This document shows positions 6,848 through 14,601 of a stretch of DNA of 15,488 bases, one piece after another. Where the stretch lies: assembly GCA_000388065.2 (NCBI GenBank), contig KB932204.1; one strand, written 5' to 3'. The notes under the pieces were generated by a model, which saw only the letters and a list, made by a program, of their open reading frames with translations, did no database searches and had not been told where the DNA came from. The translations under genes were made by a program, and so were the position numbers. Within the stretch, counting starts at the first letter, position 1. Every line of letters begins with the position of its first letter. Source of the DNA: Fonticula alba ATCC 38817 (lineage: Eukaryota > Protista > Nucleariida).

Positions 6848-6920
6848 GCTCCTGTGGCTCAGTAGGTAGAGCGTGGGACTGTTAATCCCAAGGTCCGCGG
6901 TTCGATCCCGTGCGGGAGCG
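6848..6920 (+). tRNA. tRNA-Asn (anticodon GTT), intronless
   Basis: Full cloverleaf: acceptor GCTCCTG/CGGGAGC with discriminator G; D arm GCTC-AGTAGGTA-GAGC; anticodon arm TGGGA-CTGTTAA-TCCCA; T arm CGCGG-TTCGATC-CCGTG; 73 nt. Confidence 0.96.
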
Positions 6921-6930
6921 CGTCTCTCTC

Positions 6931-6935: not shown

Positions 6936-7008
6936 GCTTTTCCGCCCCTGGCCGCGAAAGGCCGGGGGCCACCACCGCAGCAGGGGGAAGGGAGGGGCCC
7001 ACCCAAAC

Positions 7009-7031
7009 GTGTGTGTGTGTGTGTGTGTGTG
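7009..7031. repeat. (GT)n microsatellite, intergenic
   Basis: Perfect GT run between tRNA-Asn and the RAD51 stop. Confidence 0.93.
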
Positions 7032-7362
7032 CGCATGTATGGTTGCATCAAGGACAGGGATCTAGTTTACAGGTGAAGGGGGATGGGTGGTGGGCGCAGA
7101 CACGGCCCCGGGGTGCGCTGTGCGCGAACTCGACCGGGCGCGAAATCAAAAGAGAAGAAGCAGGAGAGGAGAGCAGGGGTACACAGGAGAGTGTGATGCT
7201 GACACGAAGAGGAGGGGCTTGAAGGGGGAAGGAGGGGGAGGAGGTCGACGGACGCATGGGCGAGCACGGGGACACGGGCCGGGCAGGGGGAGGGGGGGAG
7301 AGGCAGGGGGAGGCGGACGCGGCCAGAAGGGGGGGAACAAAAGAAGAAAACGAGAGGACCCA

Positions 7363-7950
7363 TCACTCCTTGGCATCGCCGACACCATCGGGGTTGATGG
7401 CGAAGACGGCCTCCCCCTCGGCCAGGCAGGGGCTGTCGAACACCTTGGCAATGCGGGTCTCCCCGCGGCCCTTGCGCAGGTAGAGGCGCGTGGTGGAGGC
7501 GTGGGCCATGATGTGGCCGCCGACCGGCTTCTTGGGATCGGCATTGAACATGGCCGCGCCGCCGTCCACCGAGGCGACCACCTGATTGGTGATGACGACG
7601 GCGATGCCGAACTCATCGGCCAGGCGCATGAGTGTCCGGAGGAAGCGAGCCAGGTGCATCTGCCGGGCGCTGAGCTCCCCGCGGCCGTGGTAGTCTGTCC
7701 GGTAGAGGTTGGTCGAGCTGTCGACGATCAGCAGGGCATAGCGGGTCTCAATCATCATGGCGCTGGCCTGCAGCAGCAGGGCCGTCTGGTGGTCGGAGTT
7801 GTAGGCCCGCGCGTAGGCCACATTGTCCAGGACCTCGGCTGGGTCCAGGCCGAAGCGCTCGGCCACGCCGACCAGGCGCTCCGGGCGGAAGGTCCCCTCG
7901 GTGTCGACGTACAGGCACTTGCCCTCGCCACCGCCCTGGGAGACGGGCAG
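7363..7950 (-). CDS. RAD51: RAD51 recombinase, 3' exon only (195 aa, equivalent to ~residues 146-339 of human RAD51); 5' exons absent from window
   Basis: [26 protein letters not shown], Walker [29 protein letters not shown] (RAD51- not DMC1-type), [29 protein letters not shown]-terminal DGVGDAKE*. Preceded by acceptor ...catcatgtgcAG at 7952-7951. No HhH domain, FxxA motif or Walker A (GEFRTGKT) found in the window. Confidence 0.9.
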
Positions 7951-8134
7951 CTGCACATGATGGGGGAGCACGTAGGCGGGGGGGGGAGGTGTGGAGGGTC
8001 CGCCGACCCGCCTCGCGCCATGTCCGCGCCCCCCCCCCCCTGCCCGCCCCGCCCCACCCCCCCCCCCCGCCACCCTAGTTTGTCGGTGTAGTACGAGAGA
8101 TTGGGGCGGGGGGGGGGGGGGGGTCGCGGGGCCA

Positions 8135-10703
8135 TCAGTACCGCATGACGGTCGGCCGGCGGGCGGATGTCCGGCGGAGAACCGACGTGCGCGACGGGCC
8201 GGCCGAGTCGCTGCTGCCGTCTAGAGAGGAAGCCAGGGCGGCCTGGATCTCCCGAACACGGGGACTGGCCTCCTCGGCAAGATGAATCTGAACAAGGCGG
8301 GGGCGGCCATCATCATGCGTGTACGCCGAGCAGTAGATCGACCGCCCGGGGTTGGTGTCGACCATGGTGACTAGCCGGACCCCGGGGAGCATGATCACCT
8401 GCACCAGGTCTCCAGTCGACAGGTACCGGACCTCGATGTGATGGTCACAGAAGGCCAGAATGAATGGGCTGGCATGGACTGTTTCCGGGAGACATGCGCG
8501 CACACGCGGGAGGCGCCCCGGCGCGGGTGGGAGAAAGGGTCGACGGTGGTATGAAAGAGCGTCAGATGGGGCAGGGGGAAGGAGAGAGGGAGGAAGAGTA
8601 GGTGGAGAGTGCATGTGCGTAAGACGTACCGAAGGACCGCGGCGCGCTGGCCCACCCAAGAACCAGGTCTCGGGAGAAGGTGCGCGTCTTCTGGTGGAGG
8701 AAGACACAGAACTCCCGGTAACATAGAATGTACTCATTGAGCTCGGCATTGGTGAAGACATCGCGCGGGGTGAGGTTCCGGATGGCGGACATCGTGTCAT
8801 TCGGCGGGACCTGGTAGATGTCCGACACGTCGCCATCCTCGATGCGCACCAGGTCAATCGACCGGGGGGAAATGACACACAGGGCATCCGGCAGGAACTT
8901 CACCGAGGACGCCTCGCCCGAGAGGATGAACTTCTTGACACGCGACATGCGCCAGATGGTCTTGCCATCCTTCTGTGCACTGAAGGGCTTGTACAGCTTC
9001 AGCGACCGGCTGTGCGACAAGCTGGGTGCCTTGGCGAGAGCAACGAAATTGGTGCCGAGGGTCTGGCCACTGTGTGTCGGTGTGTGTCGGTGTGTGTCGG
9101 TGTGTGTCGGTGTGTGTCGGTGTGTGTCGGTGTGTGTCGGTGCATCGGTGTGTCGGTGCATCGGTGTGTCGGTGTGTCGGACGGACGTGAAAGGCAGGAG
9201 AAAGCCGAGGGTAGAGTGTCAGCGAGAGGACCACCGAGCGGAAGGGCCCTCTCCCCGGGAGGGGCGCGGGAGGAGAGGCCACCCAGGCAAAGCCAGCACG
9301 TACATCGAGAAGAACTGCGCCCGGTCGGACTTCTCCACCTTGTGAATGTGCTTTTCCGTGAGCACGGTGCTGGCCTTGGACAGGAGGTAGTCCATGGGGA
9401 TGGTGGCCAGCAGGTTGTTGGCGCCGTAGATGAACAGCAGGAAGTTCTGCGGCGACATGACCGCCACCTGGCGGACATTCTCCAGGGCAATGGCATGGTG
9501 GAAGACCAGTGACCCGGAGGCCGCGTCGGCGGACCCATCCTTGCCCGAGGCGGCCTCCTCCTTGGAGATGAAGATGCCATGGTAGTTGCCGATGATGACA
9601 TATGAGCCGGAGGCGTCGGTGAAGCGGCACGAGCAGGCAATGTCATCGATGCTGGTGGAGGGGTTCTTGGCCTTGGTCTGGGCCGAGGCGGCCACGTCAT
9701 TGTTCGACAGAATCCGATGGGAGAAGGTGTGCGTGTGGGTGGTGATCCGGCCAATGCGCTCGCTGAGGATCTCCTTGAAGGACTTGCAATCATCAGGCGA
9801 GGAGAACTCCAGCGTATGGATGTCCGGCGCGCGGCCACTCACGAAGTACCAGGTGGACGACTCGTCCAGGGAGGCCTTCGACCGGGACATGCCGACCGAG
9901 CGCATGGTGGCGTGGTTCCGCCGGCGGGTGTTGGCCGAGGGGGTCTCCTGGGTCTGCGACCGGGCGCGCGCGCGCGCACACGCACACACACGCACACACA
10001 CACACACACACAAATATGCGGCAGAGTGAGTATGGTGTGGATGGTGAAGTGGGCCGAGGGAGGCACACAAGCAGACGCAAGCAGGCGCCGAGGGGAGGGC
10101 AGCGAGCAAAAATAAGTATAAAAACGCACAGTCGACCCAAGCTGCAGGGCCAGGTGCAGGCCATCCATGTCGGCGGTGGGCTCAAGGGCGGTGAACTCGA
10201 AGGTCGAGGCAAAGCGCAAATCGTGGGTCACATTGTCGCCCTCGTTCTTGGGCTTGACAAGCAGGAAGCAATTGTCGAAGACCAAGACCTTCATGTTCTC
10301 CCGGCTCTCGGAGGTAGAGGAGAAACGGACTGGGAACTCGCACAGGAGCTCGCGGCGGATGTTGCGCAGATCAAGCCACTAGGCGCGGAAGGGAGGAGGG
10401 CGGGGGGGGGGGAGAGAGAGGGTGAGAAAGGGGATCCGAGGGGGCGAGGCGCAGGTAAGTAGATGAGCTGGACGAGTGGCGACATGCGCAAGGAAAGGCG
10501 CAAGCATGGCAAGATAAAGAAGCATACCTCGAAGCGGTTGACATTGCGGAGGCTCTGCTCGAAATCGAAGATCTCCGCCAGGCGGTTGGCATCCTGAGAG
10601 ATCTTGGTAAACTGTGGGAGGAGGCGGGATGAGCATGGGAGGAGAGAGAGAGAGAGAGGTGGGTGAGTGTCAAGAGCACGTGAAGGCCGCATGGCAGGGA
10701 CCC

Positions 10704-10742
<39 letters not shown>

Positions 10743-11758
10743 GCCCAGCACATACAGTCTGATGCGCGGCCTTGAGATCGGGCATGTCCGGATGGTCGGC
10801 CGGCATGCCCTCCATGATGCGCTGAACAATCATGGGGTAGCGACCAAGCCGAGTCCGAGGGCGCGACAGGAAACTCTGCAGCGGCAGACGCTGGAAGACA
10901 TGGAATTCCCGGGCCTTCTTCAGGTACGCCCGAATCATGGGATACGTGCTTTCGGCGGACTTGAGCGTGCTCAAGGAGAGGGTCTCGTTCGGGATGAATG
11001 ACAGGTAGGAGTCGCGCATGTCGTCGGCGATGTCCTTCATGATGTCGCCAATGCGCGACACGACCGGATGCTCCTTCTGGCGCTTGAGCAGCGCGGCGCA
11101 CAGCTTGGAGTTGACCGCCAGGATGCCCTCCCACGAGTCGAAGACCGCGTGGATGAAGCTCTCGCGCGTGGCAATGTCCTTGATGTAGATGTCGGTCTCG
11201 AATTCCTTGAGGAAGCCCTGTACACGTGGGCGTGGCGTGGCGTGGGAGGTGGGAAGGGGGGGGAGGGGGAGGGGGGAGGGGGCATTTGCGTGTGCACGGC
11301 GAAGAAGCGCCCACGATCCGAGACACGGGGACGATGCGCAAAGGCGGGAGGGGACATCGGTCAGAGGGAGGAAAGGGGGGGGGGGGGAGCCATGAGCATG
11401 TGCGCACCTCACACACGAAGTACAGATCGTTGACATACTGCGACTCGGTGCGGATCAGCTCATAGATGATCTCCTGGCGCTTGCGCTCATCCTTGCTGAC
11501 CGACTCGTCCGAGAAGCCGATAGTCTCGCAGTAGGTCTTCCAGTACTCGATCTGTGTATGTGCATGGGAAGAAGATGGGCGCCAGCGAGGGAAGAAAGCC
11601 AGCGGGGGGGGGGGGGGGGGGCGGGGNNNNNNNNNNCCGGACGGGAGGCGAGGCGGCGGGATTCGCACGCCGGAAGGAAGTCCCAGGGGGCTTGACGGGG
11701 GGCCCCGAGTCCAGCCCGAGATCGCCCCGGGTGGGCAGTCCTCTCCGCCCATCGGCAT
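8135..11758 (-). CDS. Rom2-like Rho guanine-nucleotide exchange factor, DH-PH-CNH architecture (at least 8 exons, ~820 aa; 5' end uncertain)
   Basis: Inferred exons (minus) 11758-11669, 11551-11408, 11217-10756, 10611-10528, 10378-10130, 9953-9304, 9069-8630, 8478-8135 (2463 nt, in frame). DH motifs [50 protein letters not shown]; PH-like [15 protein letters not shown]; CNH-like C-terminus [26 protein letters not shown]. The first exon and start codon are tentative and an N gap lies in the following intron. Confidence 0.82.
9071..9180. repeat. Tandem repeat (TGTGTGTCGG)7 plus five 8-mer variants (TGCATCGG/TGTGTCGG) in a RhoGEF intron
   Basis: Seven exact decamers at 9071-9140, then 8-mers to 9180; abuts the 3' splice site on the minus strand. 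Confidence 0.97.
9964..10012. repeat. (GC)n-(CA)n compound alternating repeat in a RhoGEF intron
   Basis: 49 nt of continuous purine-pyrimidine alternation. Confidence 0.9.
10707..10740. repeat. (AG)17 microsatellite in a RhoGEF intron
   Basis: Perfect AG run, (CT)n on the sense strand, 15 nt after the donor. Confidence 0.95.
11627..11636. other. Assembly gap (10 N)
   Basis: Ten Ns next to a long G homopolymer, inside the RhoGEF intron 11668-11552. Confidence 0.99.
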
Positions 11759-12933
11759 CTGGGGCGCCACAGGGCGGCGGGGCAGGACCAAGCAGGGGGA
11801 CAAAAAAGAGGACAGCGCGGGGCCAGACACCGGGGCTGGGCCGCGGTGCATGCAGGCCAGAGGACCCCCCCCTGGGCGGGGGAACGGGGAAAGGGCAGTG
11901 GCGCCATGAGGCGGTGTGCCAAATTCATGGGCGCTGCCGGAAATCTGATCGCCGGGGACCGCCGCTGTGGCGCTACGGGAGTGTGCACACGTGCATTCCG
12001 CATGGTATCACGTTACAGATCAGCGGCTCGACACACGCCCGAGCGCATCGTTGCCTGAGCACACAGGGGGGGGGGGGGATAAGACCCGCTGCGTCCCCCC
12101 CCCCCCTCGCCGGCGGCGTGCTAGCCAGCCAGGGTGGTGGCGGCCTGGCGGCCTCCCGCCGGTGAGTGCGTCCGGATTTCCGGAATAAACAACCGCCCGG
12201 GGCGGGAAGTGGCCGGGGGTCCCGGTCTTCTCGGGCGGGGGCCGGGGGGGGGGGGGAAATTCACGGGCTTGAGCCTGGGCAAAGGACGCGGGGCGCCCGG
12301 GCTGACACGGGCGGTGGCCCGGCCGCCGGGGGCGCGCCAGGGCATCACTTCCTCCCACTCTCCCCCCGGGGGACCGACCAACTCCAGGGCCGAAATACCG
12401 CCACACCCGCAAGGCGTTAAAATCCTCATGTGCGTGGGGGGGGGGGGGGGGCCTGATCCACAATTATGAAGCCCCCCATCCCCTGCGCGGCTGTGCCCTG
12501 TCCCCTGCCGGGGAACTGCGCGAGGGGGTGGGCTGGGGCGTGAAAGGATGGACCAGCCAGACCGGTGTGCTCCCTGTGCTGGCTCTGGCGGGGAGGGCCG
12601 GGGCGCCCATCTGTCCCGAGTGCGCGGATGCGCTCGTTGACAGGGCCATTTTTCCTTCCGCCTCTTTGCCCACGTTGGGGGTCATGCCCGATGTGTTGGG
12701 CGCGGGAGGGGGGGGGGGAGGGGGGGGCGCCGGGGGGGCGGGTGCCGAGTGGGCACAGCCTCAGGCAGGGGCCAGGGGGGGGGGGGGGGGGGGGCCAGGG
12801 CCATTTGGCGGCCCACCGCGCGGCCCGGCCGACCCCCGGGAAGCGCTCACCCACACACCCCACAGGCGCGCCCCCACACTCGCCTCTCCCCTCCCCCCTT
12901 CTCCCCTCCCCCTCCTCAATCGACACAAGCAGC
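11759..12933. promoter_or_regulatory. Divergent intergenic/promoter region between the RhoGEF (-) and spermidine synthase (+)
   Basis: Head-to-head gene orientation; no credible coding ORF; many G/C runs. Transcription start sites are not determinable, and extra RhoGEF 5' exons may lie here. Confidence 0.55.
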
Positions 12934-14091
12934 ATGGACTCCATCCACAAGGGCTGGTTCAGCGAGCGCGGCGAGCTTTGGCCCGGTCAGGTGCGCATCC
13001 ATGGCCCGGCATCCGCCCACCCATTTTCTCCCGCCCCCCTCCGCACATACCTAACACCATGCCTCCCCTTGCCGTGACCGCGTCGGGCCGCGCAGGCCCT
13101 CTCCCTCGAGATCGAGGAGGTCCTGCACGATGTCAAGAGCAAGTACCAGCACATCACCATCTACCAGACCAAGACCTGGGGTCGCATGATGACCATCGAT
13201 GGCAACATCCAGGTATGTCCCTGTCGCCGGTTGACCCCCCCCCGCCCTGTCTCCCCTTGCCGCTGTTGTTTCCCCCCCCCCCCCCCCTCGCACCCCTCGC
13301 AGCCCAACACACGCACGCGCGCGCATTGACCCTCGAAATAGGTGACCGAGCGTGACGAGTTCTCCTACCAGGAGATGATGGCCCATGTGCCGATGTTCCT
13401 GCACCCCTCGCCCAAGCGCGTGCTGGTCATCGGCGGCGGCGATGGCGGCGTCCTGCGAGAGATCGTCAAGCACCCGGAGGTGGAGCAGGTGACCATCTGC
13501 GAGATTGACGACGTGGTGATCGACACCTGCAAGCGCTTCCTGCCCTCGCTGGCGTGCGGCTTTGACCACCCGAAGGTCCGCGTGGAGATCGGCGATGGGT
13601 TCCAGTTCCTGCGCAACCACCCGAACTCCTTCGACGTCATTGTCACCGATGCCCCGGACCCCATCGGCCCCGGGGTGTCGCTCTTCCAGCGGGACTTCTT
13701 CGCCCTGATCCACTCGGCCCTGCGTGAGGGCGGTGTCGTGTGCCAGCAGGCCGAGAGCATTTGGCTGGACCTGCCCCTGATCCGGGACATCGTCGGCTAC
13801 TGCGCGGCCCTCTTCCCGGCCGTCAACTACGGCATTGTCCAGATCCCCACCTACCCGTGCGGGTCCATCGGCCTGCTGGTGTGCTCCAAGACCCCGGGGG
13901 CCGATGTGACGGTGGCCGCCCGCGCGCCGACCCCCGAGCAGCAGGCCCTCCTGCGCTACTACAACCACCCGGTCCACGCCGGTGCCTTTGCCATTCCGCA
14001 GTTTGCTCGCGTCGCTGTCGACGAGGCCATCGCCCATGGTCGCTCGGTCGGCACCGATGGCATCAAGGTGGCCGAGGAGAAGTCCTCCTGA
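12934..14091 (+). CDS. SPE3: Spermidine synthase (putrescine aminopropyltransferase), 3 exons, 307 aa
   Basis: Exons 12934-12990, 13096-13212, 13342-14091 (924 nt). Motifs GWFSE..ELWPGQALSL, KSKYQ, DGNIQVTERDEFSYQEMM, HPSPKRVLVIGGGDGGVLRE, CEID, GDG, FDVIVTDAPDPIGP, IPTYPCGSIG, YYNHPVHAGAF. Confidence 0.96.
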
Positions 14092-14509
14092 GACGTGTCC
14101 CATCCGCCCGCCCCATTTGTCCCCCTTGGGGGGGGGCCTGCAGCCGCGCGGTGCCCATGATAAACCTCCTGTCTCTCTTGATTCGCGCGTTGATGGGCTT
14201 TTGGCTTGTCCGTATGCACTCTGGGGCGCTGCATCGCCGGAGGGCCGGGAGAGGAGAGGAACACAGACGGAAGCCAAGCGCGCTGGGGTATGCACTGGCA
14301 TCCGCGTGCCAAGAGCCTAATGGCCATGGGGGGAAGGAGCGGGAGGGGGGGGGGGACAAGAACGCCTCCGGCGTAGCCCTTGGGGATGTTTGTCTCCACC
14401 CGCGGGCGAGACGCCCCCGCCCGCCGATTGGGGAAGGTGTTGGTTCGGATCCTGCGGGCCTTGGGTTGGCAGGATGATATTTAAGCCCATGAGTAGTGGT
14501 CCCTCCTAA

Positions 14510-14597
14510 CCAACCATAGCTCAATTGGTAGAGCATCAGACTGTAGCGGTAACAAGCAATTATCTGAGGGTCGCTGGTTCGATTCCGGCTGGTTGGA
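14510..14597 (+). tRNA. tRNA-Tyr (anticodon GTA) with 15-nt intron (14547-14561)
   Basis: Acceptor CCAACCA/TGGTTGG with C1-G72 and A73 (eukaryotic Tyr identity); D arm GCTC-AATTGGTA-GAGC; anticodon stem TCAGA/TCTGA with loop CT-GTA-G|A interrupted after position 37; T arm GCTGG-TTCGATT-CCGGC; mature length 73 nt. Confidence 0.96.
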
Positions 14598-14601
14598 CTT
14601 C

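What the first reader, a model, noticed from the sequence alone, without database searches (positions are those of the whole stretch)
7363..8141. Intact but decapitated RAD51: 3' exon with a good acceptor and no room for the 5' half
Seen: a 195-codon RAD51 exon very similar to canonical RAD51, without stops or frameshifts, starting at an AG acceptor. Only 184 nt upstream on the same strand the RhoGEF gene ends (TGA 8137-8135). No sequence for the HhH domain, FxxA polymerisation motif or Walker A is visible on either strand, and no GTRYG donor lies in the gap. From recall (verify), human RAD51 has an intron at this same CQ|LP position, so the acceptor looks ancestral. Conservation argues against an old pseudogene. 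Inferred options: (a) assembly misjoin or collapse at the C/G homopolymers (8030-8123), most likely given the N gap nearby; (b) a recent real deletion; (c) a split gene completed by long-range cis-splicing (>7.5 kb, with the RhoGEF nested in the intron) or by trans-splicing, remarkable where introns are 100-240 nt.
Basis: partly seen in the sequence, partly recalled or inferred. Interest (0 to 1): 0.8.

Follow-up and report, generated by a model that had tools for sequence, protein, structure and literature searches.

The report
RAD51 head missing from assembly only
The DNA-repair gene RAD51 of the amoeba Fonticula alba looks beheaded in the published genome, but a public RNA contig continues past the break by about the length of the missing half, so the gap is most likely an assembly fault that also made annotators fuse RAD51 to its neighbour.

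Summary
On the minus strand, 7950-7366 plus the stop at 7365-7363 is an intact 195-codon RAD51 exon. It matches human RAD51 residues 146-339 and starts at a good CAG acceptor. The neighbouring DH-CNH RhoGEF ends 184 nt upstream (TGA 8137-8135). No RAD51 residues 1-145 are found in the window or in 8.6 kb more of the scaffold.

The genome is Fonticula alba (GCA_000388065.2, KB932204.1). A 1361-nt contig from a 2012 RNA run matches 7055-7953 perfectly. It then continues for 462 nt that lie nowhere in 7000-12900. That length fits 145 codons plus a short leader, so the mRNA is probably whole.

The RhoGEF RNA contig runs unspliced through its stop to 8103. GenBank's 1000-aa RhoGEF+CNH+Rad51 model is therefore an annotation chimera.

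No laid contig confirms the homopolymer-rich segment 7951-8102, and no public run was listed as holding its words. The RhoGEF also lacks 1197 nt of its 5' mRNA at a 10-N gap, and a 4175-N gap abuts the window.

Best reading: assembly loss or misplacement (about 0.75). A truly split, trans-spliced RAD51 is not excluded (about 0.06). Interest is low. This scan has noted scrambled or missing exons in other genes of this genome, but not this RAD51.

The parts
7363..7950 (-). Terminal RAD51 exon: 195 codons plus TGA, equivalent to human RAD51 146-339 (most of the ATPase core after Walker A, and the C-terminus)
   Evidence: Translation. Pfam Rad51 52-244/244, E=2.8e-99. Human RAD51 structures, 343 bits. 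GC3 of 0.92 matches the neighbouring genes.
7055..7362 (-). RAD51 3' UTR, as far as the RNA contig reaches
   Evidence: Run X5 record 1 lies on 7055-7953 with 0 mismatches.
7951..8102 (-). Unconfirmed junction segment. It holds the 3' end of the RAD51 intron (pyrimidine tract plus CAG), G12 and G12 runs on the sense strand, and a C9 run. The suspected assembly collapse or misjoin lies here.
   Evidence: By depth arithmetic, no RNA contig (X5) or independent DNA contig (X7) covers it apart from poly-G matches about 22 nt long. No run was listed for its 14 sampled words, although X1-X4 hold 0.83-0.91 of the words of 7000-9000. 81 of its 122 31-mers carry a homopolymer of 8 or more.
8103..8137 (-). 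RhoGEF stop codon (8137-8135) and the start of its 3' UTR
   Evidence: X5 record 2 (3607 nt) runs unspliced from 8478 to 8103. The ORF ends ...RRPTVMRY*.
8138..11551 (-). RhoGEF (DH ... CNH) coding exons: 11551-11408, 11217-10756, 10611-10528, 10378-10130, 9953-9304, 9069-8630 and 8478-8138. Together they give 790 residues. The gene's own 5' part is absent.
   Evidence: The spliced RNA contig has six GT..AG introns of 144-234 nt. Pfam RhoGEF E=4.9e-25, and CNH from 2 to 252 of 255 spread over three exons. 1197 nt of the contig lie upstream of 11551 and nowhere in 11552-12900.
11627..11636 (.). 10-N assembly gap inside the intron that precedes the first RNA-supported RhoGEF exon
11669..11758 (-). 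First exon of the GenBank gene model (ATG at 11758). It is not covered by the RNA contigs.
   Evidence: The gene range in the record is window 7363-11758. The ATG and a GTGCGA donor were read. X5 depth over 11552-11924 is zero once the 21 nt of the next exon are set aside.

Best explanation
Fonticula alba has an ordinary, complete, expressed RAD51 gene. Its last exon (7950-7363) is correctly assembled. The 5' exon or exons, about 435 nt of coding sequence for the helix-hairpin-helix domain, the polymerisation motif and Walker A, were lost or misplaced by the assembler, together with the promoter and the rest of the last intron. The fault lies in the G/C-homopolymer block between 7954 and about 8102. 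As a result the exon now abuts the 3' end of the upstream RhoGEF gene. The annotation pipeline found a strong Rad51 exon with no head and attached it to the RhoGEF through a non-consensus donor. That produced the 1000-aa RhoGEF-CNH-Rad51 protein in GenBank.

Shown here:
- the exon and its acceptor;
- the RNA contig diverging at the acceptor with 462 further nt;
- the RhoGEF mRNA running unspliced through its stop;
- the fused gene model;
- the lack of any confirmation of 7951-8102.

Inferred:
- that the 462 nt encode RAD51 residues 1-145;
- that they lie next to the exon in the real chromosome.
For: (1) X5 record 1 is 1361 nt long. Its letters 1-899 match 7055-7953 with 0 mismatches, and its other 462 letters lie nowhere in 7000-12900. 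462 nt equals 145 codons plus 27 nt. The match running on to 7953 rather than 7950 is what an upstream exon ending in CAG would give, since Q145 is conserved in P0018 and P0061.

(2) X5 is genuine RNA. Its RhoGEF contig is spliced at six GT..AG introns and gives a clean 790-aa ORF.

(3) That contig reads straight through every in-frame GT and the stop, down to 8103. No RhoGEF-to-RAD51 joint was listed.

(4) The record's gene at window 7363-11758 has a 1000-aa product hitting RhoGEF, CNH and Rad51. No Fonticula RAD51 of 107-413 aa is in the protein database.

(5) 7951-8102 is covered by no X5 or X7 contig, and no run was listed for it.

(6) The assembly is locally poor. The RhoGEF lacks 1197 nt of 5' mRNA at a 10-N gap, and a 4175-N gap abuts the window.

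(7) Other unchecked notes of this scan report scrambled or missing exons in other genes of this genome. One follow-up blamed wrongly ordered assembly pieces.

(8) In an environmental RAD51 with the same CQ|LP phase-0 intron, the upstream exon lies only about 106 nt away.
Against: - I could not read the 462 extra letters, so their identity as the RAD51 5' half rests on length and on the exact break point.
- There is no N gap at the break. The misjoin would have to lie inside a contig.
- I saw no DNA read or contig that holds the missing exons next to 7951.
- The blank for 7951-8102 in public runs may only reflect homopolymer-length errors: 81 of 122 31-mers carry a run of 8 or more.
- X7, the one independent DNA sample laid, is shallow (depth 5-7) and simply breaks there.
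Confidence: 0.75

Rival explanations
1. RAD51 is genuinely split. The 5' exons lie far away, more than 16 kb upstream or on another chromosome. They are joined to the acceptor at 7951 by very long-range cis-splicing or by mRNA trans-splicing of two separate precursors.
For: The mRNA contig is joined exactly at the acceptor to sequence that is absent from 7000-12900. tblastn finds no RAD51 N-terminal half in the window or up to window coordinate 24091. There is no N gap at the break.
Against: All six RNA-supported introns nearby are 144-234 nt. The junction segment is not confirmed by any data seen. The same scaffold has gaps and another gene lacking its 5' part. Other scrambled genes of this assembly were put down to misordered pieces in this scan's notes, which I did not check. 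I did not look for the complementary intron halves that known trans-spliced split genes carry, because the 5' locus is unknown.
Confidence: 0.06
2. The locus really is truncated, by a recent deletion or a partial duplication. The 462 extra letters of the RNA contig are not RAD51. They could be a chimeric contig, or another transcript or leader joined at the acceptor.
For: The letters of the extension were not seen. The exon alone has no in-frame ATG before the internal Met pair.
Against: The exon is intact, about 80% identical to animal and fungal RAD51, and has native codon usage. It is expressed, with a defined 3' UTR, and spliced at the canonical position. No other Fonticula RAD51 appears in the protein searches or in this scan's notes, so the organism would lack a working RAD51. 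The extension length fits the missing half to within a short leader.
Confidence: 0.07
3. The GenBank model is right: a natural RhoGEF-CNH-RAD51 fusion protein of 1000 aa.
For: The record's gene model spans both genes and its product hits RhoGEF, CNH and Rad51.
Against: The RhoGEF RNA contig runs unspliced through all candidate donors and its stop codon to 8103. The RAD51 contig's upstream 462 nt do not lie on any RhoGEF exon, and no such joint was listed. The only in-frame GTs near the end are GTTCTC (8182) and GTCATG (8149), against local donors GTRYGY. The fusion would lack Walker A. The model's first exon also has no RNA cover.
Confidence: 0.02

Closest known systems
Eukaryotic RAD51 recombinase (human RAD51, e.g. 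PDB 5jzc; yeast Rad51)
   Same: The exon aligns over all 195 residues with human RAD51 146-339 at 343 bits, and with Pfam Rad51 52-244/244. It scores far above DMC1, RadA and the RAD51 paralogues.
   Different: Only the C-terminal 57% is present in the assembly. The HhH domain, the polymerisation motif and Walker A are not in the window.
GenBank gene model at KB932204.1 (window 7363-11758), 1000-aa RhoGEF+CNH+Rad51 protein of Fonticula alba
   Same: It uses the same RAD51 exon and the same RhoGEF exons.
   Different: The RNA contigs show two separate mRNAs. By arithmetic (30+775+195 = 1000 aa), the model probably joins them through a GTTCTC donor at 8182. That is my inference. I could not retrieve the protein itself.
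Split genes completed by mRNA trans-splicing (Giardia Hsp90 and dynein heavy chains; cited from my own knowledge, not checked here)
   Same: A conserved gene whose halves are not adjacent in the genome sequence, while the mRNA is whole.
   Different: Here non-adjacency is seen only in a gapped draft assembly, in a segment that nothing confirms. The second locus and any pairing intron halves are unknown.
Environmental eukaryotic RAD51 gene L052 (metagenome contig)
   Same: It has the same phase-0 intron between CQ and LP...TGTCAG|GTACGT...TTAG|CTTCCT.
   Different: Its upstream exons lie directly upstream, with an intron of about 106 nt. It is only 77-81% identical and is not a close relative.
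Rom1/Rom2-type RhoGEF (DH ... CNH)
   Same: The upstream gene has a RhoGEF/DH domain (E=4.9e-25) and a CNH domain reaching 252 of 255, followed by a 77-residue tail and a stop.
   Different: Its N-terminal part is missing from the assembly at the 10-N gap.

Membership tests
RAD51 (eukaryotic RecA-family recombinase) | C-terminal ATPase core matching the Rad51 family profile to its end | tested here: met
   PF08423 positions 52-244 of 244, E=2.8e-99. Human RAD51 146-339 aligned end to end.
RAD51 (eukaryotic RecA-family recombinase) | RAD51 rather than DMC1, RadA or a RAD51 paralogue | tested here: met
   RAD51 chains score 343-345 bits, human DMC1 212-215, RadA 198 or less, and RAD51B/C/XRCC3 52 or less.
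RAD51 (eukaryotic RecA-family recombinase) | Walker A P-loop (GEFRTGKT) | tested here: not met
   It is absent from the window and from the scaffold up to window coordinate 24091. I infer it is on the mRNA's extra 462 nt but did not see it.
RAD51 (eukaryotic RecA-family recombinase) | N-terminal helix-hairpin-helix DNA-binding domain and FxxA polymerisation motif | tested here: not met
   There is no tblastn match to residues 1-145 of ten RAD51 proteins. Whether the mRNA has them could not be read with the remaining tool calls.
Split gene joined by mRNA trans-splicing | Two separately transcribed loci, each confirmed in genomic DNA | not testable with these tools
   The 5' locus is unknown. 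The 3' locus's upstream boundary (7951-8102) is unconfirmed.
Split gene joined by mRNA trans-splicing | Mature mRNA joining the halves at canonical splice sites | tested here: inconclusive
   The RNA contig leaves the genome at the CAG acceptor with 462 more nt. This is equally what ordinary cis-splicing in a mis-assembled region would give.
Natural RhoGEF-RAD51 fusion (as annotated) | Transcript joining a RhoGEF exon to the RAD51 exon | tested here: not met
   No such joint was listed. The RhoGEF contig reads through its stop to 8103, and the RAD51 contig's 5' part does not lie on RhoGEF exons.

The most novel reading that the evidence does not exclude
Fonticula alba's RAD51 is a truly split gene. 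The head is encoded at a distant locus and joined to this exon by trans-splicing or by splicing across more than 16 kb and several genes. This would sit in a genome where other genes also look exon-scrambled, hinting at a wider phenomenon and not only a poor assembly.
Probability: 0.06. Interest if true: 0.85.

Novelty: not a real feature. Interest (0 to 1): 0.15.

Why it matters
As biology it is probably ordinary: a normal, expressed RAD51.

The practical value is a correction. The public Fonticula alba proteome holds no stand-alone RAD51. It holds instead a 1000-aa RhoGEF-CNH-Rad51 chimera. That can mislead surveys of recombination and meiosis genes, domain-fusion (Rosetta-stone) analyses and orthologue sets for this key relative of fungi.

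It also marks one more place where this draft assembly drops or misplaces exons, here and at the RhoGEF's own 5' end.

If the unlikely split-gene reading were true, it would be a rare case of a core DNA-repair gene assembled at the RNA level in a relative of fungi.

Tried and rejected
- tblastn of ten full-length RAD51 proteins against the window and against L081 (window coordinates 2934-24091) found no N-terminal half. The weak hit at 14259-14339(+) is chance.
- Protein database searches with the 195-aa exon and with the 236-aa ORF found no Fonticula RAD51. The top hit P0121 is an unrelated sequence with an internal duplication.
- The search of 50%-identity cluster representatives gave no 100% hit, so the annotated fusion protein could not be fetched.
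- A degenerate DNA pattern for [16 protein letters not shown] found nothing in JGI metagenomes. A related-loci scan found nothing closer than 83%, so no close relative's gene layout is available.
- The raw RNA runs X21 and X22 (organism B) gave only poly-G junk and artefactual joints between G-runs at 8103-8124, 12434-12451 and 12704-12727. They do not carry this organism's transcripts.
- Literature: one paper used the Fonticula proteome in a RAD51 tree. The one part of its supplement that I read did not show Fonticula in the RAD51 tree, and I did not pursue it.
- Searches of this scan's notes for RAD51, DMC1 or recombinase found nothing.
- I considered the GTACTG at 8141 as a fusion donor and rejected it. 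It is out of frame with the RAD51 exon and is not used in the RNA contig.
- ORFs beyond the 4175-N gap, tested as a possible RhoGEF head, had no Pfam match.

Full report
**What is there**

The minus strand 7950-7366 is an uninterrupted 195-codon reading frame, followed by TGA at 7365-7363.
- It matches Pfam Rad51 from profile position 52 to the end (244/244, E=2.8e-99).
- It aligns end to end with human RAD51 residues 146-339 at 343 bits. Human DMC1 scores 212-215 bits and the RAD51 paralogues 52 or less.
- Its codon usage (GC3 0.92, C-rich third positions) matches the neighbouring genes, so it is native.
- It is preceded by a pyrimidine-rich tract and CAG (AG at 7952-7951).
- The frame stays open upstream to 8073 but holds no in-frame ATG and no RAD51-like residues there.

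**Surroundings**

The upstream gene on the same strand is a RhoGEF. Using the splice joints of an RNA contig, I rebuilt exons 11551-11408, 11217-10756, 10611-10528, 10378-10130, 9953-9304, 9069-8630 and 8478-8138.
- They give one clean 790-residue frame ending ...[11 protein letters not shown] at 8137-8135.
- The six introns are GT..AG, 144-234 nt long, with donors GTGCGC, GTATGT, GTATGC, GTGCGT, GTACGT and GTACGT.
- Pfam finds RhoGEF (E=4.9e-25) and a CNH domain running from profile position 2 to 252 of 255 across the last three exons. The RhoGEF therefore has its natural C-terminus.

No GTRYG donor lies on the minus strand between 8478 and 7951.

**The missing half is not nearby**

tblastn with ten full-length RAD51 proteins found nothing for residues 1-145 in the window.

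The spermidine synthase exon at 13345-14088 is 100% identical to the annotated Fonticula alba protein P0144. Looking that protein up returned GCA_000388065.2, scaffold KB932204.1:684467-705624, as locus L081. L081 matches the window with no mismatch over 12,555 bases, with window coordinate = L081 coordinate + 2933.

The scaffold carries 10 N at 11627-11636. It also carries 4175 N starting at the base right after the window's end. The 4.4 kb beyond that gap holds no RAD51 N-terminal half either.

**How the record annotates it**

The record has one gene at window 7363-11758 with a 1000-aa product that hits RhoGEF, CNH and Rad51. This explains why two protein searches limited to 107-413 aa found no Fonticula RAD51.

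The numbers fit a model made of three parts:
- a 30-codon first exon (ATG at 11758, donor GTGCGA);
- 775 RhoGEF codons ending at a GTTCTC donor at 8182;
- the 195 RAD51 codons.

This is my arithmetic. I could not fetch the protein.

**Transcript evidence**

I laid four runs on 7000-12900.

Run X5 is a 2012 RNA library of the same organism as the source DNA runs. Its contigs are spliced, so it is genuine RNA.
- Its record 2 (3607 nt) is the RhoGEF mRNA. It runs unspliced from 8478 through the stop to 8103.
- Its record 1 (1361 nt, depth 8.3) matches 7055-7953 over its letters 1-899 with no mismatch. Its remaining 462 letters lie nowhere in the stretch laid.
- No joint from any RhoGEF exon to 7950 was listed.

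462 nt is 145 codons plus 27 nt, which is the size of the missing head plus a short leader. The match ending at 7953 rather than 7950 is what is expected if the upstream exon ends in CAG, the codon for the conserved Q145 (CQ|LP). The RAD51 mRNA is therefore spliced at the predicted acceptor to about 460 nt of sequence encoded elsewhere. That this sequence is the RAD51 head is an inference from length and break point.

The two raw RNA runs of 'organism B' (X21, X22) gave only poly-G artefacts.

**Is the junction real DNA?**

Depth arithmetic shows that X5 covers nothing between 7954 and 8102. The independent 2025 DNA sample X7 has contigs at 7300-7845 and 8119-9100 and nothing between, apart from a low-complexity match about 22 nt long.

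A run search with 7951-8102 alone (14 sampled words) listed no run at all. Yet the probable source runs X1-X4 hold 0.83-0.91 of the words of 7000-9000.

The caveat is that 81 of the 122 31-mers in this segment carry a homopolymer of 8 or more. Errors in homopolymer length could hide them. The junction is therefore unconfirmed, not disproved.

**More signs of a poor local assembly**

- The RhoGEF contig has 1197 nt upstream of 11551 that lie nowhere in 11552-12900. The RhoGEF is therefore also missing its 5' part, at the 10-N gap.
- The GenBank model's first exon has no RNA cover.
- Other notes of this scan, which I did not check, describe scrambled or missing exons in TMEM120, importin-11, SPT6 and an NSF-like gene of this genome. 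One follow-up attributed this to wrongly ordered assembly pieces.

**Comparison**

No close relative's genomic RAD51 could be found in JGI metagenomes (best 83%).

An environmental eukaryote (L052-L054) has an intron at exactly the same phase-0 position...ACC TGT CAG|GTACGT...TTAG|CTT CCT. Its upstream exons lie directly upstream, with an intron of about 106 nt. The acceptor here therefore sits at a position shared with other lineages, and the normal layout keeps the head within a few hundred bases.

**Verdict**

The 'decapitation' most likely belongs to the assembly and not to the organism. The 5' exons and promoter were probably dropped or misplaced at the G/C-homopolymer block 7954-8102, and the annotation then fused the orphan exon to the RhoGEF. 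My probabilities are:
- about 0.75 for an assembly fault;
- about 0.06 for a truly split gene, joined by trans-splicing or very long-range splicing;
- about 0.07 for a truly truncated locus with a misleading RNA contig;
- about 0.02 for the annotated fusion being real;
- about 0.10 unassigned.

The decisive tests are reading the 462-nt extension, mapping it to the assembly and the raw reads, and PCR or long reads across 7000-9000.

Noticed in passing
window 11552-11758 and the 10-N gap at 11627-11636: The RhoGEF mRNA contig (3607 nt) has 1197 nt upstream of 11551 that lie nowhere in 11552-12900. The RhoGEF's 5' exons are therefore also missing from the assembly here. The GenBank start codon at 11758 and its 30-codon first exon have no RNA cover.
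   Followed up: partly
directly after the window's end (window coordinates 15489-19663; L081 12556-16730): A run of 4175 N starts at the base after the window's last letter, so the window ends at a contig edge. Poly-G/C tracts flank the gap on both sides.
   Followed up: partly
L081 16900-18627 (-), i.e. window coordinates about 19833-21560: Long minus-strand ORFs rich in Ser, Pro and Ala, with the coding-strand GC skew typical of this genome. The record lists no called gene here, and Pfam finds nothing. This could be an unannotated gene, possibly the RhoGEF's missing N-terminal part.
   Followed up: partly
window 14510-14598 (+): A tRNA of 88 nt (Rfam 60.8 bits) for which ARAGORN reports an unassignable anticodon. 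It probably holds an intron. A normal tRNA-Asn(GTT) lies at 6848-6921 (+), between the DHHC gene and the RAD51 3' end.
   Followed up: no
window 10641: The independent 2025 DNA sample X7 carries 8 extra bases (GAGAGAGA) in a GA microsatellite inside a RhoGEF intron. That sample therefore holds a slightly different strain or allele of the same organism.
   Followed up: no
window 8103-8124, 12434-12451, 12704-12727: G-runs attract poly-G reads from unrelated Illumina RNA runs and create false 'joints' between them. This is a trap for anyone laying reads on this genome.
   Followed up: yes
introns of the RhoGEF (e.g. 9070-9303, 9954-10129, 10612-10755): The introns are packed with CA, GA and CG microsatellites and with CACACCGACA-type repeats. 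The six donors read here are GT[AG][CT]G[CT].
   Followed up: partly
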